A stretch of 64,000 nt of DNA from Octopus bimaculoides (Eukaryota), in the NCBI RefSeq assembly GCF_001194135.2, contig NC_068983.1, positions 142,004,186 to 142,068,185 on the forward strand. The letters run 5' to 3'. Below are positions 7,491 through 63,190 of the stretch, piece by piece. The notes beneath the pieces are model-generated. The model saw only the letters and a list, made by a program, of their open reading frames with translations, was not told the DNA's origin and ran no database searches. Every line of letters begins with the position of its first letter. The stretch's first letter is position 1. The position numbers and the translations under genes are program-made.

Positions 7491-8619
7491 ATGGAAGTGA
7501 CAAAGGTGTATATTCAGCTTTATGAGTTTAATAAAGGCAACAACATAATGGAAAGTGTGAGGAATATTAATGCAGTATATGGGGATCGGACAATAAGTGT
7601 AAGCCAGTGTCAACAGTGATTCCAGAAATTCCAAGCTGGAAACTACAGCCTAGAAGATGGGCCTCATACTGGAAGATCTGTAGAGCTCGGCAAGGACATC
7701 CTGCAAACCCTGGTGGAACAAAATACCATTGTAACTGTTGAGGAACTAGCAAAGAAACTTGGATTTGGTCATTCAACTATTCATCAGCACCTGCATACCA
7801 TCAGAAAAGTCAGAAAATTGGGTCAATGAGTTGTTCACAAACTTTCTGAGTCTAATCGCATGCAGTAAGTGGATATGTGCTCTTCTTTGCTGTCATGTCT
7901 CACAAATGAACCCTTTTTTTGGGGGTGTNNNNNNNNNNNNNNNNNNNNNNNNNNNNNNNNNNNNNNNNNNNNNNNNNNNNNNNNNNNNNNNNNNNNNNNN
8001 NNNNNNNNNNNNNNNNNNNNNNNNNNNNGGGGGGGGAGACCAAATAGTGACTGGTGATGAGAAATGTGTTCTCTATAAAAATATCAAGCATCAAAGACAG
8101 TGGGTAGGTAAAGGAGACACACTGGCACCTCAAGCTTAAGAAGGTTTTCACCCACATAAAGTGTTGTTGTCTGTTTGGTGGGATATGAAAGGTTTAGTCC
8201 ACTTTGAACTTCTAAATTCAAACCAAATGATAACAAAGCAGATCTACTGTGAGCAGCTTAAGTCAACGCTAGAAAGAAAACGACCATTTTTGGTTTCAAG
8301 ACAAAAGGTGTTCTTCCATCAAAGTAATGCTCAGCCACATAAAATGAGAATGAAATTCCAAAGGCTGGAATAGTTTGAATGGGGACCTATGCTTCACCCA
8401 CTATATTTGCCGGACATTGCTCCATCTGATTATCATTTATTCTGCAATCTTCAAAATCATTTGGACAGAAAAAATATGAATTCTGTAGACAAGGTTAGAA
8501 CAGTACTGGAGAAGTATTTTTCATCACAGACAATTGAATTTTGGAAGAGGGACCTTGCAAGTCTACCAGATAGATGGAAGAGCAATATAAAAAATGAAGG
8601 AGAATATGTTTTAGATTAA
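7491..8619 (+). pseudogene. Mariner transposase pseudogene
   Basis: HTH region (RTISVSQCQQ*FQKFQAGNYSLED), WVPH motif mutated to *VVH, GDEK and YxPDIAPSDYHLF motifs, several stops and frameshifts, 100-N gap. Confidence 0.9.
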
Positions 8620-8636: not shown

Positions 8637-10364
8637 TTCATCATCATCATCATTGTTTAACGTCCGCTTTCCATGCTAGCATAGTTTGGACGATTTGACT
8701 GAGGACTGGTGGACCAGATGGCTACATCAGGCTCCAATCTGATTTGGCAGAGTTTCTACAACTGGATGCCCTTCCTAACGCCAACCACTCTGAGAGTGTA
8801 GTGGGTGCTTTTACATGCCACCGGCATGAAGGCCAATCAGGCGGTACTGGCAACAGCCATGCTCAAAATGGTGTATTTTACGTACCACCTGCAGAGGAGC
8901 CAGTCCAGCGGCACTGGCAACGACCTTGCTCGAATGTCTTTTCACGTGCCACCGGCACAAGTGCCAGTAAGCCGATGCTGGTAATGATCATGCTCAAATG
9001 GTGCTATTTACGTGCTACTGGCATGGAAGCCAGACAGCTGCTCTGGCAACGATCACGCACGGACAGTACTCTTAGCGCTTCACTGGTACAGGTGCCATCA
9101 CGATTTTGCTTTCACTTTCCCCAACAGGTCTTCGCAAGCCAAGTTTAGTGTCCAATGAAGGAGAGGTTGGCATGGGTGCCAGTCATCGAATTTGGTTCGA
9201 TTTCGATTNNNNNNNNNNNNNNNNNNNNNNNNNNNNNNNNNNNNNNNNNNNNNNNNNNNNNNNNNNNNNNNNNNNNNNNNNNNNNNNNNNNNNNNNNNNN
9301 NNNNNNNNNNNNNNNNNNNNNNNNNNNNNNNNNNNNNNNNNNNNNNNNNNNNNNNNNNNNNNNNNNNNNNNNNNNNNNNNNNNNNNNNNNNNNNNNNNNN
9401 NNNNNNNNNNNNNNNNNNNNNNNNNNNNNNNNNNNNNNNNNNNNNNNNNNNNNNNNNNNNNNNNNNNNNNNNNNNNNNNNNNNNNNNNNNNNNNNNNNNN
9501 NNNNNNNNNNNNNNNNNNNNNNNNNNNNNNNNNNNNNNNNNNNNNNNNNNNNNNNNNNNNNNNNNNNNNNNNNNNNNNNNNNNNNNNNNNNNNNNNNNNN
9601 NNNNNNNNNNNNNNNNNNNNNNNNNNNNNNNNNNNNNNNNNNNNNNNNNNNNNNNNNNNNNNNNNNNNNNNNNNNNNNNNNNNNNNNNNNNNNNNNNNNN
9701 NNNNNNNNNNNNNNNNNNNNNNNNNNNNNNNNNNNNNNNNNNNNNNNNNNNNNNNNNNNNNNNNNNNNNNNNNNNNNNNNNNNNNNNNNNNNNNNNNNNN
9801 NNNNNNNNNNNNNNNNNNNNNNNNNNNNNNNNNNNNNNNNNNNNNNNNNNNNCTAGTTAGCCTTCCTTTGATATTGCTGCACTTCTTATGTGTCCAGAGC
9901 TTACACTGGGTAGAGTTTCTGCCTACGCCTTTTCTACAGATCGAACAGGGCCATCTACCTGAAGGGGTTTGTGTTTTGTCTACCTTCCTACTTATTAGGA
10001 CTTTGGTTTTAGCTAGGTTGACTCTAAGGCCCTTCGATTCTAGTCCTTGCTTCTACACCTGAAACTTTTCCTCTAGTTCTGATAGTGACTCAGCAATTAG
10101 CACAAGATCATCAGCATAGAGGAGCTCCCAGGGGCAGCCTGTCTTGAATTCCTGTGTTATTGCCTGGAGGACTATGATAAATAGGAGGGGGCTGAGGACT
10201 TGATGGACCCCTACCTCTACTCGGAATTCTTCACTGTACTCATTGCCAACCCTTACCTCTGTACATGACTCACACAGCTCTCACTATCCATTCTTCTATC
10301 CCTAGTTCCCTCATTGACCACCAGATAAGGGATCGGGGGACCCTATCAAAGGCTTTTTCCATGT
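8637..10364 (-). mobile_element. 5'-truncated RTE-clade LINE (RT fragment, Cys/His finger, 3' UTR, (GAT)n tail) inserted in the mariner
   Basis: Minus-strand translation of 9853-10364: MEKAFDRVPR...GVHQ..VLSPLLF...LLYADDLVL...KTKVL...WPCSICRKGVG...CKLWTHKKC. The 3' UTR and (CAT)n tail lie at 8637-9208, with an N gap between the two parts. Confidence 0.85.
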
Positions 10365-10670
10365 CATTTTGAAAAATAAAAGAAGTATAAAAAACTGCAT
10401 TATTTATGGGATGACCCATTACATATTTCTTATCATCATTATCATCATGGATTTTATTTATTTTGCCATGTCATGTGTTGAAGAAATGAAAAACATATTT
10501 CCATGTGTCATTTCTGCTCAGTCTATTTTTATGCAATTATAACAGATTATGGATTTTAATGATCATTCTTGTTGAGTTGGGTGTTGCCTGTGGTGATATT
10601 AGTGTGAGAGAAGTTGTCTTCCTAAATAGAAGTCTTTTTAAAAAAATTAAAAAAATATTAACTAGAGTGT

Positions 10671-15946: not shown

Positions 15947-16359
15947 CATCATCATCATCATCTGCTGTAGCCATCTGGTTCGCCTGTCCACTTTCCATGC
16001 TAGCATGGGTTGGGCAATTTGACTGGGGACTGGCGAACCAGATGGCTACAGCAGACTCCAATCTGATCTGGTAGAGTTTTTACAGCTGGATGCCCTTCCT
16101 AACGCCAACCACTCTGAAGTGTAGTGGGCGCTTTTTACGTGCCACCAGCACGAGGGCCAGTCTGGCAGTACTGGCAGTGGCCATGCTCAAATGGTGATTT
16201 TTTTTACGTGCCACCTGCACAGGAGTCAGTCCAATGTTTTGTTCACATGCCACTGGCACAGAAGCGAGACTGCTGCTCTGGCAGTGATCCCGCTCGGATG
16301 GTGCTGCTAGTGCTCTACTGGCATGGGTGCCAGTCATCGAATTTGGTTCAGTTTCGATC
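15945..16359 (-). mobile_element. RTE LINE 3' end (family A), tail-to-tail with a short + copy at 15866-15915
   Basis: Family A 3' UTR. The two tails are separated by (TA)n. Confidence 0.85.
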
Positions 16360-16454
16360 TATATATATATATAATGCAATAGCTGTATGGAGTGCAGTAT
16401 TACATGTATTCTCCATACTGTCCAGTCTATTTTTGTTTGTTGTTTGCCACTAGA

Positions 16455-18560: not shown

Positions 18561-19175
18561 GGATCTATTTCAAAATGGGGGCACCAGTATTTTCTTAACG
18601 AAACACTAACGAAACACTTTGAAACTTGGGACACTGGTAGAATGTGTCATATAAAACATCTTTTACTCTTAGTCTTCTTAACAAAAAAACGTACATCGCA
18701 AGTTATTCCATGTTAAAGTTGTCGTATTTCTGTAATTTCAACCAATCACTGACGTCTATTCAGCTGAATAGAGTTACTGCTGGGCGGTCATAAAAATGTT
18801 ATTCCCTGTGACATATTTCATCTGGTTTAATCGTAATTTATACGCATATATTGTTTATAGAATAAATTACGCTGTGCGTATCTATGTGTGTAACAATTTT
18901 AGAGTTTGGATTCTAGAGTTAGGGTTAGTTTTAGGGTTAGGGTTAACAGTCTAGTTAGGGTTAGGGGATTAATACGATATACACCGTTACAGCGCTAACT
19001 GTTTTCAACTGAATAGACGTCAGTGATTAGTAGAAATTATCGAAATAAGACAATTTTTTACATGAAATAAATTCAAATACAAAAATTTTTTTCTGTTCTA
19101 TAACACAAAATAGATAAGATAAAACACTACATAAAACATAAATGAAAACTGGTGCCCCCATTTTGAAATAGATCC
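18561..19175. mobile_element. Non-autonomous DNA transposon (MITE) with an 8 bp TSD, Merlin-like
   Basis: Perfect 27 bp TIR GGATCTATTTCAAAATGGGGGCACCAG, TSD GGTTTATC (18553-18560 and 19176-19183), and a second subterminal inverted block (~18702-18778 vs ~18994-19070). Confidence 0.85.
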
Positions 19176-21075: not shown

Positions 21076-21790
21076 TTCACTTAGATTGTATTGAACATGA
21101 GGGCCACTATGAATAGCAGTGGCTGCAGGACAGGCCCCTGTGGAACACCACTCATTATTTGTGTTTTCTTGGAGGTGGCCCCACTGACCACCACTACCTA
21201 ACTTCTATCTCCAAGTTTTCCAAATATGCCAAGATTTTGGAGCTTGTGACAAATCATACCATGGTCGACTTTGTCAAAGGCTTTTGCAAAGTTGAAGTAT
21301 ATCACTTCCACATTTGAGTTGTTGAGCAGCTGCTTTAGCACCCAGTTGTAATGCTGCAAGAGCTGTGTCAGGCAGTTTGTACCTGGTCAAAAACTATGTT
21401 TAGTGTCAGTCAGTAAGTCATTCTCTTCAAGGAATGCAATTAATTTCCTTCAGACTATTCATTCCATGACTTTGCTGATGTGTGAGGTCAGAGAGATAGG
21501 CCTATAGTTTTTAGCATCTGCTTCCTCCTATTATTCCCTCCTTTTTTTTTTGTCCAGGAGCTTAACATTTGTGAGGAAGCTCTCAAAAAGTAGCTGCAAT
21601 AGTTTTGCAAGGACTCGTTTACATGGCTTGAGGAGGATTGTTGAGAATCCATCAAGGCCAGTAGCTGAGTCTGCGTCTATATCATCTATTGCTAGCATTA
21701 CATCCTTTTCTTCGATGTTGATGTAATCAATTCTTATTGCCTCCTCTTCAGCTTCTGTAGAAGTAAAGAATTCTATATGTTTGTGCATAT
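21076..21790 (-). mobile_element. CR1-clade LINE reverse transcriptase fragment
   Basis: Minus strand: SATGLDGFSTILLKPCK, KNYRPISLTSHISKVME, IYFNFAKAFDKVDHG, SGVPQGPVL, with stops and frameshifts. Confidence 0.85.
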
Positions 21791-21810
21791 AAACTTCTAA
21801 TCTATGATCT

Positions 21811-37060: not shown

Positions 37061-38285
37061 AACCAGTAAACTAATGGATGGAAGAGAAGATGAAATTCTC
37101 TATGATAAAAATAATAATAATGAAATTGTATATAGTGCTCAGGTGCACTACAACTTATCAAAGGTGCCCATATGATAGCAATGACCCAGCAGTAACTAGC
37201 TGTATTATTGACCAGTGGTAATAATGGTATTGATTAATTGGTTAAAAGATATATTTAAAAGACAGTAAGACAAAGTCTTCAGCTGTCTTAAGTCTCAAGA
37301 GATTTATTTCCAGTTAAAGATTAATAGTCTTAAAGTAGAAAGGTGAGATATTTTTTTTATTTTGATGATGATGTTGATAACTCTTTTTCTGCATTACACA
37401 CACATACACACTCTGTCTTTGAATGTAATGGTGTTGTGGGTGTAACTGATTTTCACATTATGCAGTGCGCATGTAATGCAATAGTTGAGACTTTGCAATG
37501 TCTAGGAAACTGGTAATTGGAATTTGAACAAGCCTTATGGATAAATCATAGCAAACATGTTAGGTAGTGATGTAATTGATTTTGTTAATGCACGACTATT
37601 TTACTTTAGATTAAATAATTTTACAAAATAGTCTTTGATAATAATCGTCCAACCCATGCTAGCATGGAAAGCGGACGTTAAACGATGATGATGATGATGA
37701 TGACATCACCAAAAAAACTTTTTCATCAAAATATACCTTGCTATTTTATTGTGGTTTATGTGCTAGGAAATATAGTAAGTTCATCATCATCATCATCATC
37801 GTTTAGTGTCTGCCTTCCATGCTAGCATGGGTTGGAGTTTCTTATTTCTAAGGAAACGGACAAAAAAGTAAAAAAAACTTTTTTTAATACTCTTCAAATG
37901 TTTCTAACTGTTATGTTTACTGTTTATATAAATATCAGTAAGGTAGTGGAATATATTTGATAAATTTTTTCCCTTAATAAAATTTTGATTGTTAACCTCG
38001 TCTTAAGAATGAAAACTGACTACTTTTCAGTTGGTTTGATTTCTGATCATCATCAGAGCTGTATCATTTTCATGGATGTGTTCTTAGTACCAAACTGGAT
38101 TTGAATTTGAAACCTTTCCCCTTTCTCCAAAAAATAAAAGAATAAAAGAAAGAAAAATTAGCTTTGTGGAAACAAGTTTTATTATACCACATATTTCTGA
38201 TCAGCTTCTGAATTTTTATATATAGATACTTTTTATTTGTTATGGCAGATAGAAATTAGATGAATGGTCATTTAATAAAAGGTAA

Positions 38286-38690
38286 TTATCATCATCATCA
38301 TCATCATCATCATCGTTTAACATCTGTTTTCCATGCTGGCATGGGCTGGATGGTTTGACTGAGGTCTGGAGAGCCAGCAGCTGCAAAAGGCTCCAATCTG
38401 ATCTGGCAATTATTCTACAGCTGGATGTCCTTCCTAACGCCAACCATTCCAAGAGTGTAGTGGGTGCTTTTTGTGCCACTGACACATGAGCCAGCAATGA
38501 TGGCGTTCAGATGGTCCTTTTTACGTGCCACCAGTATGGGAGCCAGTCTGGGGGTACAGGCATCAGCCACATTCAGTTGGTGCTTTTTACGTGCCACCGG
38601 TACGAGAGCCAGTCAGGGGCACCGGCCCCAGCTACGATATTGGTTTTACTTGACTCAGTAGATCTTCTCAAGCATATCATATCACCCGAC
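38286..38690 (-). mobile_element. RTE LINE 3' end (family A), intronic
   Basis: (CAT)n tail, CCATGCTGGCATGG hairpin, tandem TTTTACGTGCCACC units. Confidence 0.82.
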
Positions 38691-39185
38691 ACATCTGGGG
38701 TATTCTTAAAAGGACATGTGTGGCTGCAATCTCACTTTAGTGACTGTATACACATTAAATATTGTATCGGCTAACTTGATATGGAAGGTCATTTTGTAAC
38801 CAGTGTTCTCAAAATAATACCATGTGTTGTGCACCTAGTTTAATCAGATTTATTAATTACTCTGGTCTTCAAATTTTTCTTCGTTACCTCCTTAAAAATT
38901 TCATCATAAATATCCATGTGTTTTCTTAAACATAATGCTGGTATGTTTTGCATATTAAAAGGTGGGTGGATGGCAGAATCAGTAGTGCTCTCAAAATGCC
39001 TTTCTATTACATCTTTGTACTTTGAGTTCAAATTCCACTCTGGTTGATTTTGCTTTTTATTCTTCTGGTGGGAAGGAGTCAGCAAAAAATATGCACCAGT
39101 CAAGTATTGCTCCCTCTTTCAAAATTTGTAGCTTTGTGCCTGTATTAGAAATTCTGATGTGTGTACTAATCTTTTCTTCATCCAG

Positions 39186-39242
39186 ATTGGCTCCTATGAT
39201 AAGCAGCTGTGGGAACAATCAGTAGAAAAAAAACTTTATAAG
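39186..39242 (+). CDS. Phtf: PHTF homolog, coding exon 2 (IGSYDKQLWEQSVEKKLYK)
   Basis: TCCAG acceptor, AAG|GTATGT donor, 57 nt, phase 0/0. Matches the PHTF motif IGAYDQQIWEKSIEQ. Confidence 0.93.
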
Positions 39243-39339
39243 GTATGTATTTAACATAGTTCTTTAAACTGATCATTCTAAAATGTTGTTATTAATGTTT
39301 GGCCTATAATAAAGCATTTGCAGCAGTAGTATACCTGAC

Positions 39340-39376
<37 letters not shown>

Positions 39377-39386
39377 NNNNNNNNNN

Positions 39387-39422
<36 letters not shown>

Positions 39423-40489
39423 AAAATAGAATTAAAAACATGAGCACATATATGTTTATTATTAATAGCCAGTAGAAGTTACAGAGCAACTCAAGAGCCA
39501 AGAGTTACATGTGTTGCCAACACATTTATCTCTCACCCCTTGAGTTACTCTGTAACTTTTGTTGATTATTAAAACTAAAATGTATGTAATATATACACAG
39601 TGCTTGCACACACACATATACATACAAACATAGATATTACTGTAACTATTTCTATACTTAAAGTGCTCTTGGTTATAATTTTGCCAGAGTTAAATTTTTT
39701 TATCTTTTTACATCAGCGTAAGATTAATTCAATGGACTACTTTAACCCAGAGAAAAAAATTTCTCTATTATCTCTCATCCAGACTTGATTCTTGTATTTG
39801 TTATTTCAGTGACAATGCAGTTGAGATGGCTTTTATTTTTAGTTATTCTTTTTTAAATATTGTTTCCATCCATTTTAATATTGGTGATGTATTTTGATAT
39901 ATTTGTACATACTGTTTAAAGAATTGTTCGCAGAAAACATTCTCATTTATTTATTAACCCTTGGTCTCTGCTTAGAATTCTGAAGTGCAACTAGTTGTAA
40001 AATCTAGCTTTGCCATACATATTCCTGCCTTTCTATAGATGATGTGAGGAGATCAGTCAAGTAGATTTGCTTAACCAATACAAAATAGAAAATTAGCCAT
40101 TAAATGAAATGATAAAAAAAATGATATCATGTCTGTCAAATTGGGCCATTCTCTAACAAAAAGGGCTTCATTTAGAAAGTGCTTTTGCATTCAGAAAATG
40201 GAGAAAATGACATTGACCAAAACAGAAGATTTGCTAAAACTGAAATCATGTAGAATGTTATTGGCTGTAAAACATTGCTGTCATTTTTATATAAATTTGT
40301 TTCATGATAATAATTGGACATGTTAACCTAATCTTCGACAGCACAAAAACAGAATTGCTAAACATATCAAGAAAACAGTCTTATACCATCAGTAAATTAT
40401 TGGTATGCTGACAGGAGAAGGCCTGCAACATGACTATTAATGAACATCATACAAATGTTAGGCCTCATAATCAGTAATATTGTTAAAAC

Positions 40490-40830
40490 TTCACCCCGCA
40501 AACCATTCTTCTTCTTTAGGGTCACGAAATATTTCAGTTCTGATCAGTTGCTGACTCTCTATAAAGCACAAATAAGATTCACATTAGAGTATAACTCATA
40601 TATCTGGAACAGTGTCTTCTGCAATAGTTCCAGGTTAACCAACCTTATGACTGAAATTTGGTTGATGGAAACTGCATGACAGCACATCACAGTTCTTATT
40701 CTCAGACTATATTCAAAAGGAAGACTTTTAAGTGATTGGCTATGATTTCATTACCAACAGGATTCAACAATGAGCCCTTAGATGTTTCTTTTCTCTCTTT
40801 CTAACCACATGCCAATGACTTTTGCTTTTT
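40490..40830 (+). mobile_element. CR1-like LINE ORF2 C-terminal fragment
   Basis: FFFRVTKYFSSDQLLTLYKAQIRFTLEYNSYIW matches the CR1 LLxLYKAQIRPxLEYxxxxW motif. Confidence 0.7.
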
Positions 40831-41370
40831 TTTTTTTTAATCTAGCTATGTGTGTACGCTATCAACTCGAGTTTACTTGATTGGGTATTTCTCTCCCTTT
40901 CATCTTTGTGTTTTTCTTCTCTGGCCCTTTCATTGAATGCTGCCTCAGTCTGGAAATCCCACCCCATGCATGTTTTCATCAGGATATCAACCTGCAGAAG
41001 TTCAAACTGAATGCCAATCTCATAAGTCAGAGAAGACCAGCGAAAACCATGAGTTCTTACTCTGTCTTCCTTTCACCTGCTGCTGCTGATGATAAGTTAG
41101 GCCCATGGCCAACAATTTTAGTGGAATGGGGTTAGTCAGTTAGATTGACTCCAGTAAATTGCTCTTAGCTGAGTTCTATTAGTCTAATTTGACTGAGCAA
41201 TTTCCAAGATGTTTGATTGGCTTAATGAAACTTCTTAGGAATAACTCACAAGTCTGGTACTCTGTATATGCTACCATATTTCATGTGTGTTTCAGTCAAC
41301 TTTTTTTGGATTAACATTCTTATTCTACCAGCTGTTTTTTTTTTTTATCAGTAGGCTGTTTTAAAGTTAA

Positions 41371-41620
41371 TCATCATCATCATCATCATTTAACGTCTGC
41401 TTTCCATGCTAGCATGGGTTGGATGATTTGACTGAGGACTGGTGAACCAGGTGGCTACACCAGGCTCCAATCTGATTTGGCAGAGTTTCTACAGCTGGAT
41501 GCCCTTCCTAACGCCAACCACTCTGAGAGTGTAGTGGGTGCCTTTACGTGCCACCGGCACGAAGGCCAGTCAGGCGGTACTGGCAATGGCCATGCTCAAA
41601 ATGGTGTATTTTACGTGTGC
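41371..41620 (-). mobile_element. RTE LINE 3' end (family A), intronic
   Basis: Near-identical to 8637-8880. Confidence 0.88.
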
Positions 41621-42954
41621 AAATGGAAGTTGTTTTGAAATAGTTCTTGGCGTCCCTTATATAAGGTTTAGATGCTATAATGTGCCTTCAGTAATATTCT
41701 CACTCATACAAGAAAACCAATGTATTTCCCGCTGCTAGTCACATACAGACCTGTAATTGAAGTTTCTCTCTGTTTTGCAACCTTGACACTGGTTTTTATC
41801 TGATTAATTACAACTACTGCAACCTGATACCAGTAATTATCTTCAGATATTTTTTATCATTTCATATCTTTATCATTCAACATCTGATCAGAAGCTATTC
41901 TCTTGCAGATGGTTTTGGAAAGAGAGCAATGTATGTAGCCTGCTAGTCTTAAACTCAGTTGAAATGCTTTAAAGAAAAAAAGATAAAACAAAAAAAAAAA
42001 AACAAGTAATTAAAACGAGACAGTTTATCAAACATTACTGCTATGATTTGGCTAGTCTACCTTAGAAGTGACATAATAAGAAAGGGGTCAAGTATAGGAT
42101 GTCTGTATGCTTATGTATGTGTTTGTGTAAATATTGATGTATACATGTATCTTATGACAGTAGATTTAACCTCAGCTGACGTCTTTTTTGCTAGATATAT
42201 TTGCTATACACTCCTTGTAGTTTTGTAAATAACTCTCTCATTCCAATTTCTTGATATCCCTCCCTCCCTACCACTGTCTGTTGGTCTCTCTCTGTATATC
42301 CCACTTATTCTCTCTTCCTTCCGTTCTCATTTTACGTTATTCTCTTGACACTTGTTGAATCCTTACAGGAACTAGGAAGGCTAAATATTCAGAGCCAAAT
42401 ATTAGCCATGTCCTATTTATGGCCACCACTTACCTAAATTGTTTAGTGTGTTTTTTTTTGTTTATTAGTTAGTTAATAATACCAATGATATAAATGTAAG
42501 TTAAAAGAAATGTCTTAAATATGAAGATGCAGGCTTTCATGGTAGGTTAGCATTTCTCGATTTCATTTTCAGTTAAGAAAAAAATCAAATAAAAACTAAA
42601 AAAGAAAAAGCCATTTCTAAATTGTCTACATTATTTTATGCTTTGTATAAGTGTGCATGCTTCTTTTTCTTTAACACTTTATGTAGAATATGTTTTTTTT
42701 GTTTATAGTTACATGTATATATGTTAATGTACACATGCAAGTCACGTTAACTATTCTTATTTTCGTAACTCTCAAGGATAAATTTTATTACATAAGTTTT
42801 ATTTAATCTAGATTTACTCTGTTGCTTGTCTACATGAACTACGTGGTTCATTTTTAGTTTGACGGCAAATTATGATTTCTTTAAAAATAATAATGTTTAT
42901 TGATATCTAATAAAATTTATTTGTGATTAAAAAATTAGTTAGCTCTGTACAACT

Positions 42955-43030
42955 CTTCTTCTTCTTCTTCTTCTTCTTTTTCTTCTTTTTCTTCTTCTTC
43001 TTCTTCTTCTTCTTCTTCTTCTTCTTCTTC
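42955..43030. repeat. (CTT)n microsatellite
   Basis: Read directly. Explains the poly-Phe pseudo-ORF. Confidence 0.97.
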
Positions 43031-43799
43031 ATTAATAATGACAGTAATTTACAGTTAAGTTTAATCCGTTACTACATAATGCTATCTATCTGTTCAACGC
43101 TGTCTACCATATATAGAAACAGTTCTTCAAAATATGGAGCTTGTTTCTGTTTAGATTTTAACATTTCTCAGTTTTATTTCATTTCTGCTGATTTCAATCT
43201 CATTGCATTTATGAGTGTCGTTAATTTTTATTTTTGGTCATTATCATATTTGTGATTGGTATTACCGCCAAGCATAGACACACATACATGTATACACACA
43301 CATACATGTATAGACACACACACAAACTTGTTTTACAGAACTTATTTCTTACATGTCTCTCCTACATCTAAAAAGCAAAATAAGATTTGAACCAGTGTGT
43401 GTGCATCTATATGTATGTGTCATTATCATTTAACATCCATGTTCCATGCTATATAATGTATGTGTATCTGTATGTATATATATATATATGTGTGTGTGTG
43501 TGAGTGTATAAAAAGGTTGAATTAGATTTGTCCTTTAATTTGGAGGTTTCCAAAAATGATTTCTAGTATGCTGATAGCTTACCGGCATAAATTTGTGAAT
43601 ATGAAAATAATACTTGTATATGATGTGTTGTGAATTTATGGAAAGAAATCCTGTAAAACTCAATGATTTTGTTAAAAATGGAGATGTTAAAATATATAAG
43701 AGAACTTATATATTTTAACATTTTCTCTTCTCCATTTAAAAAAAAAATTGTTGAGTTTTATGGGATTTCTTTCCATAAATTCACAACACACCATATACA

Positions 43800-43855
<56 letters not shown>

Positions 43856-44052
43856 GGTTATGAGAGGTAATGGTGTCAGTAAGACCCAAAGGTATCAGGT
43901 AATGTTGAGTAAGTGCTATGGATAGACCATAGTTAAGCTCCAGGTTCGGTGATTATGCGAATAAGGAGTCCAACGTAGGTCATATATCAGCGTGCGTATA
44001 TATAAAAAATTTTTTTCAGAATGAGATAAAAAAATCAAGGTTGTGAAGAAGG

Positions 44053-44473
44053 ACCCACTACACTCTCGGAGTGGTTGGCATTAGGAAGGGCATCTAACTA
44101 TAGAATCCTTGCTAGATCAGATTGGAGCCTGGTGCAGCCTCCCGGCTTTCCAGTCCTCAGTCAGACTGTCCAACCCATGCCGGCATGGAAAGCAGGCATT
44201 AAACAATGAAGATATATATAATGTATGGGTGTGTGTGTATATCATCATCATCATCATCATCGTTTAACATCCGCTTTCCATGCTCGCATGGGTTGGACGA
44301 TTTGACTGAGGACTGGTGAAACCGGATGGCAACACCAGGCTCCAGTCTAATTTGGCAGAGTTTCTACAGCTGGATGCCCTTCCTAACGCCAACCACTCAG
44401 AGAGTGTAGTGGGTGCTTTTACGTGTCACCCGCACGAAAACGGCCACGCTCGAAATGATGTCTTTTATGTGCC
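44053..44473. mobile_element. Tail-to-tail pair of RTE family A 3' ends (+ 44053-44212, - 44240-44473)
   Basis: Two ~160 bp homologous arms in inverted orientation, separated by ~30 nt of TA/GT microsatellite. Confidence 0.88.
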
Positions 44474-45039
44474 NNNNNNNNNNNNNNNNNNNNNNNNNNN
44501 NNNNNNNNNNNNNNNNNNNNNNNNNNNNNNNNNNNNNNNNNNNNNNNNNNNNNNNNNNNNNNNNNNNNNNNNNNNNNNNNNNNNNNNNNNNNNNNNNNNN
44601 NNNNNNNNNNNNNNNNNNNNNNNNNNNNNNNNNNNNNNNNNNNNNNNNNNNNNNNNNNNNNNNNNNNNNNNNNNNNNNNNNNATGATATGATATATATAT
44701 ATATATATATGTATAACGTGAGAGAGTTAGGGGTTGGGGGTTCGACCCACTAAGGGATAGTATCTATCCAGTATACTGCTGGGAGGGTACCCAATTATTG
44801 CTACACTAGTGCTATACTAAGTGCAATCAATGGGAGCAGGTAAAAGTGGAGGTTTTACCCCAAATTTGTATAACAATTAGAAAATGGAGGATAATATGCT
44901 GAACCCAACTACTTGCAGACGATGTAACCCGTTGAATTCATTAATTTAATTCATAGCAAAAGTGACAAAAAAAAGAAAGAAAAAGAAAGAAAGAACCAAA
45001 GCACAGGTGTCTATGGCAGACTATGTTATTTTGCCAACC

Positions 45040-45570
45040 TATCTGAGAAAAAGTTATTGAAAATCACCTGGCAAGACAAGGTCCCAGACACAGGTCTTCT
45101 CTCAAGCTAATCTGCCAAGCATTTATACACTGCTGACGATTGCAGGTCAGGTGGGCAGTCTACCTTGTTTGAATGTATGACACATGACTACCCAAAAGAC
45201 TGTTTTACAGTGAATTGGCAGATGGCAGATGATAAGGTTGGCAAAAAAATCACTTCAAAGTTACACTAAAGCTTCACTGAAGTGCTTTCTGTTCAACCTC
45301 GGCATCTGGGAACTGCATGGCATAGCTGCACCAACAGAGGTGTCACCTCTCATGAACAGAATAGGACCACAGAAGCACAAAAAAAAAAAAACGTGAGCTG
45401 CACATGTCCAAAGCCAACTCTTTGCCCTCATTCCCAGCCAACCACCAGAGCTCAACCTTCAACAAAACCTTCTGAGCACATATCGGCCTGATCAGCCACA
45501 GCCAGATGCACCGTAACTCATCTTCTCCCATTTGATGTTCTTGGTCATCATTGGGAACAACAAATGAACA
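45040..45570 (+). mobile_element. RTE-BovB-like LINE 3' end with a terminal C2H2-type finger relic
   Basis: Broken frames give LLKITWQDKVPDT, ANLPSIYTLL, LPKRLFYSELADG, TLKASLKCF, STFNKTF*AHIGLISHSQMH. Confidence 0.75.
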
Positions 45571-45580
45571 TTATTATATA

Positions 45581-45629
<49 letters not shown>

Positions 45630-45748
45630 TCAAAAAGGGATAAAAATCTTTTACAAGAATTTTATCAGGAAGCCAGTGTGTAAAAAAAATTCATACGGGA
45701 AATTTCTATTCCCAAGAATATAATTATTCGTTTAATACTATGAACAAT

Positions 45749-45810
45749 ACTATGCTGATGAGCGGAGTCTAGATTAATTCTAGTAATCGCGAAATCGGTC
45801 GATACATAGT
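45749..45810 (+). ncRNA. Type I hammerhead ribozyme motif (intronic, sense strand of Phtf)
   Basis: Stem I ACTATG/CATAGT (6 bp), core CTGATGA 45755-45761, stem II GCG/CGC with inner CTAGA/TCTAG, GAAA 45791-45794, stem III (A)TCG/CGA(T), cleavage triplet ATA 45802-45804. Confidence 0.85.
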
Positions 45811-46289
45811 TTAATACTAAATGTGTTTATTTTAGGAAGTCCAGTGTGTGGCATTATTCTGTAGTAATGCCCCTTATATAAATATAAACGAATATATATA
45901 TATGAATCATAAGGATTCAATAGAACCATGGCACATTAACATGTAGGATGCTTGAAATGGCTAGGTACAATAACATAAAGTTCACAGTGAGGTAAACAAC
46001 TCAGTTGAAAATAATGAGAAACAAAGACTCTAATCAGGGAGATGGTACATATGTTTAGCTAGTTAAAAAAATATAAGCAACGCAACAAACTAACCTTCTC
46101 CATGGTAGTTATGGTAAAAACTGCATGCTGGGATCAGGTGCCCTTTTCTCTCCATGCTGTCAGACATGCCTACAATAGCAATCCCCAACAGATCCTTGGT
46201 GCTGTGACACCACTTCCCAGCACAAATCCTCAGATGCAAGTTTTGAGCTTTCAAGTCAAGGAGGTCATATCATGTTAGAGGTGGAGAAT

Positions 46290-46600
46290 CACATAGTTCT
46301 CTCAGGTCTTACCTAATATGGACTGCCATTTCCTCATCACATAGAACTTGTATTTGATGTTTATCATTCACTGTATTGCTGATAGGGGATTCTGCTACTA
46401 GAGCTTGGTGATGGTCCTCATCAACTTGCTGGGTTTGTCACTGATGATGTTTTGGACCTGCTGGACAAACCCAGCCATCCTAAAGACATCTGATTACTAA
46501 GAATTTTTGTCTTGGCCATGGGTAAGCCATCCTTGCCAGAGGTCTTCAGCTCTTTCCTGATCCTTGGCACAAAGGACCTTCCCATGTTCAAAAAGTTGGC
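46290..46600 (-). mobile_element. maT/Tc1-like transposase N-terminal relic
   Basis: Minus-strand GFVQQVQNIISDKPSKLMRTITKL and IKYKFYVMRKWQ resemble the maT HTH region. Heavily broken. Confidence 0.5.
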
Positions 46601-47814
46601 AGTCTCTGAATTGATTTAACAGACTGTTGGAGCTGTAACCTCTGTGTATCTCTTTGCTTTATTGATGCTGCTGATATAGCTGAAAGAGAAATGAGTGAGT
46701 TAAAACTTGGTACATGTCATGGCAAATTACGTGAGATTGTCTCTCACTTATGGCCTGTTAAGGTTTTTTCAGCCTCAGGCTGACTAAAGCTTTGTGAGTA
46801 AATTTAGTTGACAAAAACTGTACAGGAGTCTGCTGAATGTGTGTGTGTAGGTGTGTGCTTGTACACCCTTGTCCTGACATCTTGTAAACAAACATCACTG
46901 TTATGTAAAGCATATTTGGCCATGGAAAATATACAGTTCCTTACTTGGCAACAGGAAGGGCATCTGGGTGTAGAAAAGTTATCTCAACAAATTTTGTCTG
47001 ACCCATGGAAGCATGAAAATGGGGGCATTAAATGATTATGATATATTACATATATAAATTACAATTTTTTTTTTTTCCATCATCATTTTTCTATTCTTTT
47101 CTATCCTGGTGCGGATTAGATAAGACTTCTTGAGCAATATTTCACAGTACATGGCCTTTCTGATGCCAACCCTTACTTGATTTCAAGTTAGGTATTTTAT
47201 TTTAGAGCTGTTTGCATATCAAAGTGCTGAACAAGATGTTTTGTTTATGGGCGTTGTAGACAAAGATTATCACTGCCCGAGTGAAGACCAACATGCACAG
47301 GTACACGCAAACACACAAACTCACAATTTACTTCAGTGGTTTCCACTGACTAAATTTCACTCACAAGACATTGGTTAACCAAAGACCATATTAGAAAACA
47401 CTTTTTCAAGGTGCTCTTCATTTAGATCAAACACAAAACCATTTGCTTATGAAGCCATACCTTTTTCTACCGCATATGCATATGTGTGTATAAAACCCTA
47501 TTTGTAAATTGAGAGAAAAACACATGGGCTCAATGTGTTATAAAGTAGTACATACATCTAGTAATCATGAGATATGTGGTTCAGTTTCCATCAGTAGGTG
47601 CATTGTTTTACATACACATTTCCAACTAAAGCAGGTTAATTTTTTTCATGTAAATTTTGCATTTGTTCTCAGTTGGAAATATTTTATGGTACATCTTTAT
47701 ACCTTTGGAAAGTGCATGACCAAGAAACATTGCCTTTTATTGATTTGTTTTTTTTTTTTACAATTCCTAAATTTCTTGCCTATATAAGATTTATTTTTCT
47801 CTGTCTTTTTTTAG

Positions 47815-47884
47815 TCAATAAATAATGTTCCTCGTAGAATTGGTCGGATGAAGACAGAATTCATAGATGTTGACTTGGTGCGAG
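47815..47884 (+). CDS. Phtf: PHTF homolog, coding exon 3 (SINNVPRRIGRMKTEFIDVDLVRG)
   Basis: Poly-T TTAG acceptor, GAG|GTAAGA donor, 70 nt, phase 0/1. Matches the PHTF motif DLIDVDLIRG. Confidence 0.95.
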
Positions 47885-57854: not shown

Positions 57855-58336
57855 TATCTCACCGAGGCGATGACTACTGACCGAGACCTTTGGAAATGTG
57901 CTGTGCGTGAGAAGACCCGGCAAGCCAAGTAAGATCGTTGCCAGTGCCCCTGGACTGGCTCTTGTGCGGGTGGCACATAGGATGCACCATTTTGAGCGTG
58001 GCCGTTGCCGTTGCCAGTACCGCCTGACTGGCTTCTGTAGGATTTTCGAGCGAGATTGTTGCCAGTGCCCCTGGACTGGCTTGTGCGCGTGGCACATAAA
58101 AGACACCATTTTGAGCGTGGCCATTGCCAGTATCGCCTGACTGGCCTTCATGCAGGTGACACATAAAAGCACCTACTACACTCTCTGAGTGGTTGGCGTT
58201 AGGAAGGGCATCCAGCTGTAGAAACTCTGCCAAATTTAGATTGGAGCCTGGTGTTGCCATCCGGTTTCACCAGTCCTCAGTCAAGTCGTCCAACCCATGC
58301 TAGCATGGAAAGCGGACGTTAAACGATGATGATGAT
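57855..58336 (+). mobile_element. RTE LINE 3' end (family A), intronic
   Basis: Several tandem ~60-70 nt units, then the terminal region and a (GAT)4 tail. Confidence 0.88.
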
Positions 58337-61764: not shown

Positions 61765-63190
61765 GCAAGTTACTCTTGTATTTTATCAAACAGTACAAAT
61801 ACAACACATTGCACTCACACACACACACACACACATAATTATCATGCTGAGATGGTTTGGATGATATTTTATGATCCAAGTCAATTCTAATTGGATGCCA
61901 CTGCTCTTACAGATGAACTGGAGGAAGACATCTTGCTTGTATGTTTCATTTTTGTCTTGGTTTCTACAGCTAAATGCCTTTCCTATCACCGGCTACTTTA
62001 CAAAGTGTACTGGCCACCATGTGCAAAGTGTACTGGGAGTGATGTCAGAAGAACAGCCAGAATACTTTGAAAAAGGGAACAAAGGTATGATGGTAGAAAC
62101 AGAATGATGGGTTGAGAGAAAAAAAGGGAGTCATGGGTGATAGTAAAGATAGATAATGGTTAGAGTGAGTGATGAATGACAGTAACAAGTGCCCTTGGGA
62201 GAGTGAATGATGACCAGCAATACAGAAAAGGGTGAGGGTAGAGTGTGTTGGGTACAAACAGGTCCAATGAAGTCTCATATGTCAGTCATATGATGGGTAA
62301 GAGAGGTGGAGTTACAGTGATGATAGTAGGGGTATAGAATGGAGTTATGCCCATACCATCCTTTGTGAAATGGATGGCAAGATTGATAGGGAGATGAGAA
62401 GAAGTCAAAGATGTGGAAGGGCAACAAATGCAGACTTCACAGGATGTGTGTGTGTGTGTATTTTAATATTTTGTATTGGCATAACAAGATTGATAACCTG
62501 GCGTTGAACTCATTATACATATATGGTCCAGAATACAATGTTAGGTTATCTTGTACAATACATCTGACTCCTCTTGTACCCGTTTTTTCTCTCAGCCCAT
62601 TGGTACTCCAGTGCTAACATGACGTATTCAGTGAAGTTGTTTGCTTCGTTTCTTTCTAGCTTCTGTAAGTTCTCTACATTGATAATCATTTCTCACTATC
62701 ATGCAGCTTTGTAGTTTCAATACAAGCATCACTCAGTCTACTTTTCACTCTGGGAGAGAACTCTCTTGCCAGCACAAGTAATATCCCCCCTTGGACTTTT
62801 TTTTTGCAATCCTTTTTCATTCTGGTTCCTGTACTTTTGAAACAACACTTTTGTTGACTATGTCACATAGATAACAGAAGCTATCGACCAACTCTAGAGA
62901 GCCCTGTGCTCTTAGTACTTATTGCCTTCATTGCATCTGTTACCTACTAAGTTTACCTTCTGTATTAATCTACTGGTAATCCCTCTATACTTCTTGTGTA
63001 TCGTAATTTACAGTGACAGCAATATATGTAATATTTACTTATTTCTTTTCTGTATATAAGCAAAACTATTTTTCTGATGGTAACTAGTTCCTGTCTTCTT
63101 CCCTACTTTCTAATACTTTAGACTTTGTTTACTTCAATACCTTTGATTCTAGGTCTTGTTTACATGCCTGCTATTTCAGTTTTAATTCTA

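What the first reader, a model, noticed from the sequence alone, without database searches (positions are those of the whole stretch)
45749..45810. Apparently intact hammerhead ribozyme on the sense strand of a Phtf intron
Seen: every element of a type I hammerhead is present and pairs. These are stem I ACTATG/CATAGT, core CTGATGA, stem II closed by a canonical G-C (GCG/CGC, extended by CTAGA/TCTAG), GAAA, a short stem III (ATCG-gt-CGAT) and an AUA cleavage triplet (cut after 45804). CpGs in the stems are retained although most repeats nearby have lost theirs. Established: type I hammerheads occur in Penelope-like elements and non-LTR retrozymes, and intronic self-cleaving ribozymes are known in vertebrates (hammerhead in RECK, HDV-like in CPEB3). 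Inference: the Phtf pre-mRNA could self-cleave inside the 8.6 kb intron between coding exons 2 and 3, affecting splicing or output. The very tight stem III loop suggests that cleavage may need dimerisation.
Basis: partly seen in the sequence, partly recalled or inferred. Interest (0 to 1): 0.8.

Follow-up and report, generated by a model that had tools for sequence, protein, structure and literature searches.

The report
Retroelement-type hammerhead ribozyme motif in octopus intron
A complete hammerhead self-cleaving RNA motif really sits in an intron of the octopus Phtf gene, but it looks like one stray copy of a ribozyme-carrying mobile element common in animal genomes, not a device the gene evolved to control itself.

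Summary
Positions 45749-45810 (+) carry every element of a type I hammerhead: a 6-bp helix I, CUGAUGA, a G-C-closed helix II, GAAA, a palindromic helix III and A17, with the cut after 45804. It lies on the sense strand of the 8.57-kb Phtf intron. A loose descriptor expects about 5e-4 such motifs per window by chance.

Rfam gives no hammerhead hit. A covariance model I built from four experimentally studied animal retrozyme hammerheads ranks it first in the window, but only marginally (18.6 bits, E about 0.004).

The design matches invertebrate retrozyme hammerheads, except that helix II is long and interrupted. The motif sits in a roughly 265-nt, CpG-rich, strongly folding segment. This segment is bounded by (TA)n tracts and contains two nested direct repeats.

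In only 81 kb of random Octopus vulgaris DNA I found a second hammerhead with the same unusual design. It too lies between (TA)n tracts, inside a kinase gene model and antisense to it.

Best reading: a solo copy of a non-autonomous element of the Penelope-like or retrozyme kind. Self-cleavage is plausible but untested, and a role in Phtf expression is unsupported. It is a new member of a known kind, of modest interest.

The parts
45749..45754 (+). Helix I, 5' strand (ACTATG)
   Evidence: Pairs with 45805-45810 through 6 Watson-Crick pairs.
45755..45761 (+). Catalytic core box C3-A9 (CTGATGA)
   Evidence: Exact consensus. Aligned to the core of model R1.
45762..45790 (+). Helix II, long and interrupted. 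Basal GCGG/TCGC (45762-65 / 45787-90), internal loop AGT/TAA, distal stem CTAGA/TCTAG (45769-73 / 45779-83), loop TTAAT (45774-78).
   Evidence: Sequence. This hairpin is present in every predicted fold. The validated retrozyme hammerheads have 4 bp plus a 5-6-nt loop here.
45791..45793 (+). Core G12 A13 A14
   Evidence: Exact consensus.
45794..45803 (+). Helix III: A15.1...U16.1, a 10-nt near-palindrome ATCGGTCGAT. It can form 3 bp plus tetraloop GGUC within one molecule, or 10 pairs between two molecules.
   Evidence: Same design as the coral retrozyme helix III ACAGTACTGT.
45804..45805 (+). A17 and the predicted scissile bond (cut between 45804 and 45805)
   Evidence: Position follows from the hammerhead numbering applied to the sequence. 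Not tested experimentally.
45805..45810 (+). Helix I, 3' strand (CATAGT)
45730..45740 (+). Inner direct repeat, left copy (GTTTAATACTA). The right copy is 45809-45819.
   Evidence: Exact 11/11 match at 79-nt spacing. Only 21 non-simple direct repeats of this kind occur in the 64-kb window. Possibly a target-site duplication around a 68-nt insert; this is inference.
45809..45819 (+). Inner direct repeat, right copy. Overlaps the last 2 nt of helix I.
45667..45681 (+). Outer direct repeat, left copy (AGGAAGCCAGTGTGT). The right copy is 45834-45849 (AGGAAGTCCAGTGTGT).
   Evidence: 15 of 16 positions match at 167-nt spacing. It is one of only 4 such repeats in the window, and the other 3 lie inside a SINE-like repeat.
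45834..45849 (+). Outer direct repeat, right copy
45627..45891 (+). Putative solo element (about 265 nt) carrying the hammerhead, lying between two (TA)n tracts
   Evidence: - The + strand folds at -60.7 kcal/mol, z = -3.5, with 0 of 200 shuffles as stable. The - strand has z = -1.6.
- CpG observed/expected is 1.35 against a window median of 0.22, top 1.2%.
- No second copy in the window.
- The boundaries are inferred from the flanking microsatellite.
45593..45626 (.). (TA)17 tract bounding the element on the left
   Evidence: TRF.
45892..45903 (.). (AT)6 tract bounding the element on the right
   Evidence: Sequence. Only 1.3% of 62-nt segments in the window are bracketed by such tracts within 200 nt on both sides.
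39186..39242 (+). Phtf coding exon upstream of the host intron (IGSYDKQLWEQSVEKKLYK)
   Evidence: Pfam PF12129 match, tblastn lead, AG/GT boundaries read.
47815..47884 (+). Phtf coding exon downstream of the host intron (…RRIGRMKTEFIDVDLVR)
   Evidence: The intron is 39243-47814, 8,572 nt.

Best explanation
The motif is a genuine hammerhead of the animal retroelement lineage. It is carried by a solo copy, about 265 nt long, of a non-autonomous element of the non-LTR retrozyme or Penelope-like (PLE) kind. The element landed, probably recently, in a (TA)n microsatellite inside the 8.57-kb Phtf intron, and it happens to be in sense.

In its native setting the ribozyme cuts longer or multimeric element transcripts after H17. 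This yields unit-length RNAs with 5'-OH and 2',3'-cyclic phosphate ends, which a tRNA ligase circularises and a PLE reverse transcriptase copies back into DNA.

Here a single copy rides in the Phtf pre-mRNA. It may cleave at 45804|45805 to some extent. That would be a by-product of the insertion, not an evolved control of Phtf.

Shown: the motif, its improbability by chance, its intronic sense position, its insertion-like surroundings, and a second hammerhead of the same design in another Octopus genome.

Inferred: the element class, its mobilisation mechanism, its young age, and any catalytic activity.
For: 1. All core and helix requirements are met. Chance expectation is about 5e-4 per window with a loose descriptor.
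2. A covariance model built only from four experimentally studied retrozyme hammerheads (coral, mussel, two axolotl; sequences from the PMC7229834 supplement) puts 45749-45810 first in the window. It covers the full model at 18.6 bits, E about 0.004.
3. The architecture equals the published 'canonical metazoan type I' design: helix I 6 bp, helix II 4 bp at its base, and a short palindromic helix III (PMC4209133).
4. The surroundings look like an insertion:
   - (TA)n tracts lie on both sides, a context with a 1.3% background.
   - Two nested direct repeats of rare kinds bracket the motif.
   - CpG observed/expected is 1.35-2.07 in a window at 0.32.
   - The + strand has a fold z-score of -3.5.
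5. 81 kb of unrelated O. vulgaris loci hold a second intact-core hammerhead, L059 4599-4664 (-), with the same rare design:
   - helix II of 3 bp, an internal loop and a 5-bp distal hairpin (26 nt inserted);
   - a 10-nt palindromic helix III;
   - A17;
   - (TA)n tracts on both sides, a context with a 3.4% background there.
   Its roughly 380-nt element folds with z = -8.8.
6. Between the two Octopus hammerheads, helices I and III keep 95.5% of cells paired, and 3 pairs change on both sides. Slid controls give 20-38%.
7. [quoted passage not shown] The literature describes both as usual for PLE hammerheads (PMC4209133).
8. PLEs insert preferentially into microsatellites, including (TA)n for some clades. 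They are heavily 5'-truncated and carry hammerheads near their 3' ends (PMC8557442).
9. Two further decayed canonical-size hammerhead relics turned up in the same 81 kb. Hammerhead-derived sequence is therefore frequent in Octopus DNA.
Against: - No Rfam hammerhead model reports the motif.
- My own model separates it only marginally from a spurious hit at 17.2 bits.
- There is no second copy of the 265-nt segment in the window or in any fetched cephalopod locus.
- Outside the hammerhead, the window element and the O. vulgaris element are not significantly similar (z about 0 and -0.5). One shared family is therefore not shown; only a shared ribozyme design and insertion context are.
- No PLE reverse transcriptase motif was seen in the window or in L001.
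- The element boundaries, and which direct repeat if any is the target-site duplication, remain unresolved.
- Pattern scans of the metagenome and viral collections gave no relatives.
Confidence: 0.72

Rival explanations
1. Domesticated intronic ribozyme. The hammerhead cleaves nascent Phtf pre-mRNA in the 8.6-kb intron and thereby tunes splicing or mRNA output. This would parallel the conserved intronic hammerheads of amniote RECK, CTCL and DTNB, or the CPEB3 HDV-like ribozyme. It is the first reader's inference.
For: - Sense orientation, an intact core and all helices.
- Retained CpGs.
- Precedents exist. Intronic hammerheads are conserved in amniotes (PMC6155905). Inhibiting the Cpeb3 ribozyme raises CPEB3 expression (PMC10919898 abstract).
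- The motif is 2.0 kb upstream of the acceptor. By inference, a ribozyme cutting at 0.1-0.8 per min could compete with intron completion.
Against: - There is no evidence of conservation. The only cephalopod orthologue reached (L001) does not include this intron.
- Perfect flanking direct repeats and undecayed CpGs in a CpG-poor genome fit a young insertion at least as well as selection.
- A like hammerhead lies antisense within another gene model's range, so genic location is not special.
- In Xenopus 42-44% of retrozyme copies overlap introns, and such copies are under-represented rather than favoured there.
Confidence: 0.05
2. Catalytically dead relic. The motif descends from a retroelement hammerhead, but this copy does not cleave at physiological Mg2+. 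The long interrupted helix II removes the usual loop 1 - loop 2 contact, helices I and III are weak, and a competing fold sequesters the core.
For: - Beyond the 6 bp of helix I there is no closing stem or recognisable loop 1.
- Loop 2 is replaced by a 21-nt irregular hairpin.
- The nearest-neighbour minimum-energy fold (-18.4 kcal/mol) pairs CUGAU of the core with AUCGG of helix III, whereas the hammerhead fold is -12.7. The hammerhead-compatible fraction is 4.6e-5.
- PLE minimal hammerheads cleave poorly in vitro (PMC4209133).
- Only 1 of 9 Xenopus retrozyme dimers cleaved in vitro.
Against: - The competing-fold argument fails its control. The four studied retrozyme hammerheads, including efficient self-cleavers, also have hammerhead-compatible fractions of only 1e-2 to 1.6e-5 in the same calculation.
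- The mussel hammerhead lacks most conserved tertiary-contact nucleotides and still cleaves at about 0.1 per min.
- No core position is mutated.
Confidence: 0.4
3. Chance look-alike. An AT-rich intron happens to contain CTGATGA, GAAA and three short complementary stretches in the right order.
For: - With a loose descriptor, about 20 such matches are expected per 2.7-Gb genome.
- No curated Rfam model reports the motif.
- The custom model's E-value is only about 0.004, and that model also scores spurious sites at 17.2 and 13 bits.
Against: - The per-window expectation is 5e-4.
- Helix I is all Watson-Crick, and helix II has an extra 5-bp distal stem.
- The motif coincides with three independent oddities of its surroundings: a (TA)n bracket, nested direct repeats and a CpG excess, each at roughly the 1% level.
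- A second hammerhead of the same unusual design and context appears in only 81 kb of O. vulgaris DNA.
Confidence: 0.05

Closest known systems
Type I hammerheads of metazoan non-LTR retrozymes (Cervera & de la Peña 2020, PMC7229834; e.g. coral Acropora millepora Amil224, mussel Mg353)
   Same: - Open helix I of 6 bp, CUGAUGA, a 4-bp base of helix II closed by G-C, and GAAA.
- A short palindromic helix III. The coral ACAGUACUGU and this AUCGGUCGAU are both 10-nt palindromes that can form 3 bp plus a tetraloop.
- The carrier is about 265 nt, within the published 170-400 nt range.
- The carrier RNA is strongly self-paired.
   Different: - Loop 2 (5-6 nt in the studied examples) is replaced by an internal loop plus a 5-bp distal hairpin, 21 nt in all.
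- There is no tandem array; this is a single copy.
- No loop 1 or closing stem is recognisable.
- No circular RNA or cleavage data exist.
- The Rfam hammerhead models do not report it.
Hammerheads in the pseudo-LTRs of Penelope-like elements (Cervera & de la Peña 2014, PMC4209133; Craig et al. 2021, PMC8557442)
   Same: - A large helix II.
[quoted passage not shown]
- A small palindromic helix III.
- Insertion into microsatellites, including (TA)n.
- Short 5'-truncated copies, with inverted or direct partial copies at the ends.
   Different: - Typical PLE 'min-HHRs' lack helix III altogether, whereas this one has a full helix III.
- No PLE reverse transcriptase or GIY-YIG coding sequence is nearby.
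Conserved intronic hammerheads of amniotes (RECK, CTCL, DTNB; de la Peña & García-Robles 2010, reviewed in PMC6155905)
   Same: A type I hammerhead in sense orientation inside an intron of a protein-coding gene. These are themselves thought to derive from retroelement hammerheads.
   Different: The amniote motifs are defined by deep sequence conservation at orthologous positions and by canonical loop-loop contacts. Here conservation is untested, the surroundings look like a young insertion, and loop 2 is atypical.
Newt/salamander satellite 2 and axolotl retrozyme hammerheads
   Same: Type I with a palindromic helix III.
   Different: The amphibian motifs have a 1-2-bp helix III and need tandem copies to act as dimers. 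This motif has a longer helix III of the invertebrate type and no neighbouring copy.

Membership tests
Hammerhead ribozyme (any type) | Conserved core C3 U4 G5 A6 N7 G8 A9 / G12 A13 A14 / A15.1-U16.1 / H17 (not G) | tested here: met
   CTGATGA 45755-61, GAA 45791-93, A 45794 paired with T 45803, A 45804.
Hammerhead ribozyme (any type) | Three helices radiating from the core, with the 10.1-11.1 pair closing helix II | tested here: met
   Helix I has 6 bp. Helix II has G-C, C-G, G-C, G.U plus a distal 5 bp. Helix III has 3-4 bp.
Hammerhead ribozyme (any type) | Significant match to a curated covariance model (Rfam Hammerhead_1, _3, _II, HH9, HH10) | tested here: not met
   No hit at gathering score over the window. 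No hammerhead hit at E<=10 in 601 nt or in 91 nt. The 21-nt expansion of loop 2 is the likely cause; that is inference.
Hammerhead ribozyme (any type) | Site-specific, Mg2+-dependent self-cleavage after position 17 that is abolished by core mutation | not testable with these tools
   Needs in vitro transcription or RNA end mapping.
Metazoan type I hammerhead of non-LTR retrozymes | Type I topology with helix I about 6 bp, helix II about 4 bp and a short palindromic helix III | tested here: met
   Side-by-side with four studied examples. Top hit of model R1, built from them, at 18.6 bits and E about 0.004, which is marginal. Helix II has a 4-bp base but continues into an extra hairpin.
Metazoan type I hammerhead of non-LTR retrozymes | Conserved loop 1 - loop 2 tertiary contact | tested here: inconclusive
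   No canonical 5-6-nt loop 2, and no closed loop 1 is visible. The mussel retrozyme hammerheads also lack most of these nucleotides and still cleave.
Metazoan type I hammerhead of non-LTR retrozymes | Carried by 170-400-bp units arranged in tandem (dimers to multimers), with solo monomers also occurring | tested here: inconclusive
   There is one roughly 265-nt candidate unit and no tandem copy. A 15/16-nt terminal redundancy at 167-nt spacing could be a partial second unit. Solo monomers are a recognised class.
Metazoan type I hammerhead of non-LTR retrozymes | [quoted passage not shown] | tested here: inconclusive
   One further hammerhead of the same design was found in 81 kb of O. vulgaris, but the flanks are not significantly similar. 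Whole cephalopod genomes and RNA data were not searchable here.
Penelope-like element (autonomous copy) | ORF with a telomerase-like reverse transcriptase and a GIY-YIG endonuclease, flanked by pseudo-LTRs | tested here: not met
   No ORF adjoins the motif. No PLE-type RT or GIY-YIG motif was found by pattern in the six-frame translation of the window. At most it is a non-autonomous or extremely truncated derivative.
Conserved (domesticated) intronic hammerhead | Presence at the orthologous intron position across distant species | not tested
   - The related-cephalopod locus L001 begins downstream of this intron.
- The exon query found no homologue.

The most novel reading that the evidence does not exclude
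Octopus genomes harbour an undescribed, abundant subclass of retrozyme- or PLE-type hammerheads. It would be marked by a long, interrupted helix II and by insertion into (TA)n microsatellites. The copy in the Phtf intron would be catalytically active in sense and would measurably truncate or delay a fraction of Phtf pre-mRNA. That would be a young, not yet domesticated example of how intronic ribozymes such as those of RECK begin.
Probability: 0.1. Interest if true: 0.55.

Novelty: new member of a known kind. Interest (0 to 1): 0.3.

Why it matters
Hammerheads of mobile-element origin are known across animals. However, the held literature contains no report of them in cephalopods: five papers mention both terms and none is on this topic. 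Two intact motifs with an unusual interrupted helix II, in two Octopus species, point to a cephalopod lineage of ribozyme-bearing elements worth cataloguing.

For Phtf itself the practical message is caution. A perfect-looking ribozyme in sense inside an intron is what a random retrozyme or PLE-derived insertion looks like. It is not by itself evidence of gene regulation.

If the copy proved active, it would be a convenient natural case for asking how much intronic self-cleavage a gene tolerates.

Tried and rejected
1. Rfam scans at gathering and at permissive thresholds gave no hammerhead hit.
2. Sensitive blastn of the motif and its flanks against the window found only microsatellite matches and no second copy.
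3. Exact-pattern scans of the collections:
   - A specific pattern gave 0 hits in the metagenome collection.
   - A looser pattern gave 0 hits in the viral collection.
   - A relaxed pattern gave 54 metagenome hits. On inspection these are GC-rich chance matches without hammerhead helices.
4. Attempts to reach the orthologous intron failed:
   - The 290-aa Phtf exon found one related-cephalopod contig (L001), but that locus starts downstream of the intron.
   - The exon just downstream gave no homologue.
   - O. bimaculoides proteins are not in the positional index.
5. I first read the competing fold, with the core paired to helix III, as evidence against activity. I dropped this after the same calculation on four studied retrozyme hammerheads gave equally low hammerhead-compatible fractions.
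6. By eye the 5' leaders of the window element and the O. vulgaris element looked alike. A shuffle test showed no significant similarity outside the hammerhead, so I do not claim one sequence family.
7. The 16-nt inverted repeat 45719-34 / 45885-900 is AT-rich and within chance expectation.
8. The lower-ranking R1 hits in the window (62605-62637, 46656-46696) lack the core on inspection and are spurious.
9. A pattern search for PLE RT or GIY-YIG motifs found nothing.
10. No stop-free frame covers the element, so a protein-level proxy search was not possible.

Full report
**The observation**

- Helix I: ACTATG (45749-54) pairs with CATAGT (45805-10), six Watson-Crick pairs.
- Core: CTGATGA (45755-61).
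- Helix II base: GCGG/TCGC (45762-65 / 45787-90), with the canonical G10.1-C11.1 pair.
- Helix II interior: a 3+3-nt internal loop, then a distal stem CTAGA/TCTAG capped by TTAAT.
- GAA: 45791-93.
- Helix III: the 10-nt near-palindrome ATCGGTCGAT (45794-803).
- A17 at 45804, so the predicted cut is 45804|45805.

A hammerhead descriptor run on both strands of the window finds nothing comparable elsewhere. In 1.2 Gb of first-order Markov sequence with the window's composition, motifs with helices of at least 6/4/4 pairs occur at 5e-4 per window. At that loose stringency a 2.7-Gb genome would still hold about 20 by chance. The motif alone is therefore strong but not conclusive evidence.

**Gene context**

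Pfam PHTF1-2_N matches the + strand exons. Together with inspection of the splice sites, this gives an intron of 8,572 nt at 39243-47814. The motif lies in it, in sense, 2.0 kb upstream of the acceptor.

**Covariance models**

There was no hit at gathering thresholds. There was no hammerhead hit at E<=10 when only 601 nt or 91 nt were given.

I then took the hammerheads of four experimentally studied animal retrozymes from the supplement of PMC7229834 (coral Amil224, mussel Mg353, axolotl Ax353 and Ax330). I aligned them and built model R1 without the candidate. With filters off, R1 ranks 45749-45810 first in the window, end to end, at 18.6 bits and E about 0.004.

This support is marginal. 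A 17.2-bit hit and a 13-bit hit prove spurious on inspection. The cost comes from the 25-nt insertion the model must open in helix II.

**What kind of hammerhead**

Set beside the four studied ribozymes, the candidate has the published 'canonical metazoan type I' design: helix I of 6 bp, helix II with a 4-bp base, and a short palindromic helix III (PMC4209133).

Its helix III matches the coral design. The coral ACAGUACUGU and this AUCGGUCGAU are both 10-nt palindromes that can fold as 3 bp plus a tetraloop. The coral retrozyme cleaves efficiently as a single copy, at about 0.8 per min. Dimer dependence is described for amphibian motifs, which have a 1-2-bp helix III.

The real departure is helix II. 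An internal loop and a 5-bp distal hairpin replace the usual 5-6-nt loop 2.

**Folding**

The nearest-neighbour minimum-energy fold (-18.4 kcal/mol) pairs CUGAU of the core with AUCGG of helix III. The hammerhead fold is -12.7 kcal/mol, and the hammerhead-compatible fraction is 4.6e-5.

I first read this as evidence against activity. The same calculation on the four studied ribozymes gives fractions of 1e-2 to 1.6e-5. The argument does not discriminate, and I withdrew it.

**Surroundings**

The motif sits in a roughly 265-nt segment (45627-45891) between a (TA)17 tract and an (AT)6 tract. Only 1.3% of 62-nt segments in the window are bracketed in this way.

Two nested direct repeats enclose the motif:
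- An exact 11-mer, GTTTAATACTA, at 45730 and 45809. Only 21 comparable repeats occur in 64 kb.
- A 15/16-nt repeat, AGGAAG(T)CCAGTGTGT, at 45667 and 45834. Only four such repeats occur in the window, and the other three lie inside a SINE-like element.

The segment is CpG-rich: observed/expected is 1.35 for the segment and 2.07 for the motif, in a window at 0.32. Its + strand folds with z = -3.5, against -1.6 for the - strand.

These are the marks of a fairly recent insertion of a structured RNA-derived element. I cannot say which repeat is the target-site duplication, or whether the outer one is a terminal redundancy from copying a roughly 167-nt circle for more than one round.

**Relatives elsewhere**

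No copy exists in the window. Pattern scans of the metagenome and viral collections returned only chance matches.

The collections do not allow DNA searches of cephalopod genomes. I therefore used a SINE-like ORF of the window to reach Octopus proteins and fetched four unrelated O. vulgaris loci, 81 kb in total.

Model R1 found a second intact-core hammerhead there, at L059 4599-4664 on the minus strand:

GCCAUG CUGAUGA a GGC-[26 nt]-GCC GAAA CUGAUCAGU A CAUGGA

It shares these features with the candidate:
- An interrupted long helix II: a 3-bp base, an internal loop, and a 5-bp distal hairpin UAUCC/GGAUA.
- A 10-nt palindromic helix III.
- A17.
- Helix I ending in AUG/CAU.

It also lies between (TA)n tracts, a context with a 3.4% background in that locus. 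Its element is about 380 nt, has 46-bp terminal inverted repeats and folds with z = -8.8.

Between the two Octopus motifs, helices I and III keep 95.5% of cells paired, with three pairs changed on both sides. Slid controls give 20-38%.

[quoted passage not shown] Heavy 5' truncation, inverted partial copies and microsatellite targets, including (TA)n, are PLE traits (PMC8557442).

The L059 copy lies within the range of a protein-kinase gene model, antisense to it. Genic location and orientation therefore look incidental.

One caveat applies. Outside the hammerhead the two elements are not significantly similar. What I have shown is a shared ribozyme design and insertion context, not one sequence family.

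The same 81 kb also contain two mutually homologous, canonical-size hammerhead relics with mutated cores. Hammerhead-derived sequence thus appears common in Octopus DNA.

**Interpretation**

The best-supported reading is a solo copy of a non-autonomous retroelement of the retrozyme or PLE kind, carrying its processing ribozyme. It inserted into a (TA)n tract that happens to lie in a Phtf intron.

Self-cleavage of the Phtf pre-mRNA is possible. The core is intact, and the helix III design is one that works in coral. I put in vitro activity at roughly 0.4-0.5, given three published results:
- PLE minimal hammerheads cleave poorly in vitro.
- One of nine Xenopus retrozyme dimers cleaved in vitro.
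- The mussel motif cleaves at about 0.1 per min despite lacking the usual tertiary-contact nucleotides.

An evolved role in Phtf expression has no support. The precedents are the intronic hammerheads of RECK, CTCL and DTNB (PMC6155905) and the Cpeb3 ribozyme (PMC10919898). The amniote hammerheads rest on deep conservation, which could not be tested here and which the young-insertion signs argue against. In Xenopus, retrozyme copies commonly overlap introns yet are depleted there relative to intergenic DNA.

**Novelty**

This is a new member of a known kind. The held literature has no report of cephalopod hammerheads, and the interrupted helix II is a minor architectural variant.

The decisive steps are a whole-genome census in Octopus assemblies, an empty-site comparison of the orthologous intron, and a cleavage assay.

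Noticed in passing
L059 4420-4850 (minus strand), Octopus vulgaris OX597840.1: A second intact-core type I hammerhead (4599-4664) with the same interrupted long helix II and 10-nt palindromic helix III. It sits in a roughly 380-nt element with 46-bp terminal inverted repeats between two (TA)n tracts. It lies antisense within the range of a protein-kinase gene model.
   Followed up: yes
L059 10622-10668 (+) and L056 10390-10433 (+), Octopus vulgaris: Two mutually homologous, canonical-size hammerhead relics: helix I CCAYUA/UGGUGG, helix II of 4 bp plus a 6-nt loop. Their cores are mutated (CUGAAGU; UUGACAA with GAAA changed to AAAA). Each lies just downstream of a SINE-like repeat copy. No counterpart exists in the window.
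   Followed up: partly
window 8744-9148, 16080-16453, 38240-38774, 44316-44470, 57874-58260 and others: A high-copy SINE-like repeat with an internal 120-130-nt duplication. Its chance ORFs (…AEFLQLDALPNANHSESVVGAFTCH…) match database entries annotated as hypothetical or C2H2/WD40 proteins of O. bimaculoides and O. vulgaris. Those annotations are probably repeat-derived.
   Followed up: partly
window 18917-18966: A short interstitial run of TTAGGG telomere-type repeats.
   Followed up: no
window 8161-8619: Remnant of a mariner-type transposase (Pfam Transposase_1, E 7.7e-12), interrupted by a stop codon.
   Followed up: no
window 10280-10460 (-) and 21500-21800 (-): Fragments of non-LTR (LINE-type) reverse transcriptase coding sequence (…MEKAFDRVPRSLIWW…; …FAKAFDKVDHG…). 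No Penelope-type RT motif was seen anywhere in the window.
   Followed up: no
window 44049-44418: A large inverted repeat (arms of 100 nt and 64 nt, 82-83% complementary) about 1.3 kb upstream of the hammerhead, next to an assembly gap at about 44470-44680. It is probably two SINE-like copies head to head.
   Followed up: no
window ~7.9 kb, 9.2-9.86 kb, 31.6-32.2 kb, 44.47-44.68 kb: Runs of N (assembly gaps). The window comes from a draft scaffold, so repeat content near the gaps is incomplete.
   Followed up: no
L001 (ENA ERZ21867824 ctg117542l): A syntenic Phtf locus of a more distant cephalopod. One downstream exon is 89% identical in protein and the large serine-rich exon 36%. Introns there are longer, and the N-terminal exons lie beyond the fetched 10 kb.
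   Followed up: partly
L012, L017, L028, L039, L041, L044 (soil/peat metagenome contigs): Six contigs share a near-identical stretch, CTGATGAGCACGCCCTAGGGCCGCCCGGAGACCCAAGATGACGAAATCGATCGAT, picked up by the relaxed pattern. It lacks helix II pairing, so it is not a hammerhead. It is probably a conserved bacterial sequence.
   Followed up: no
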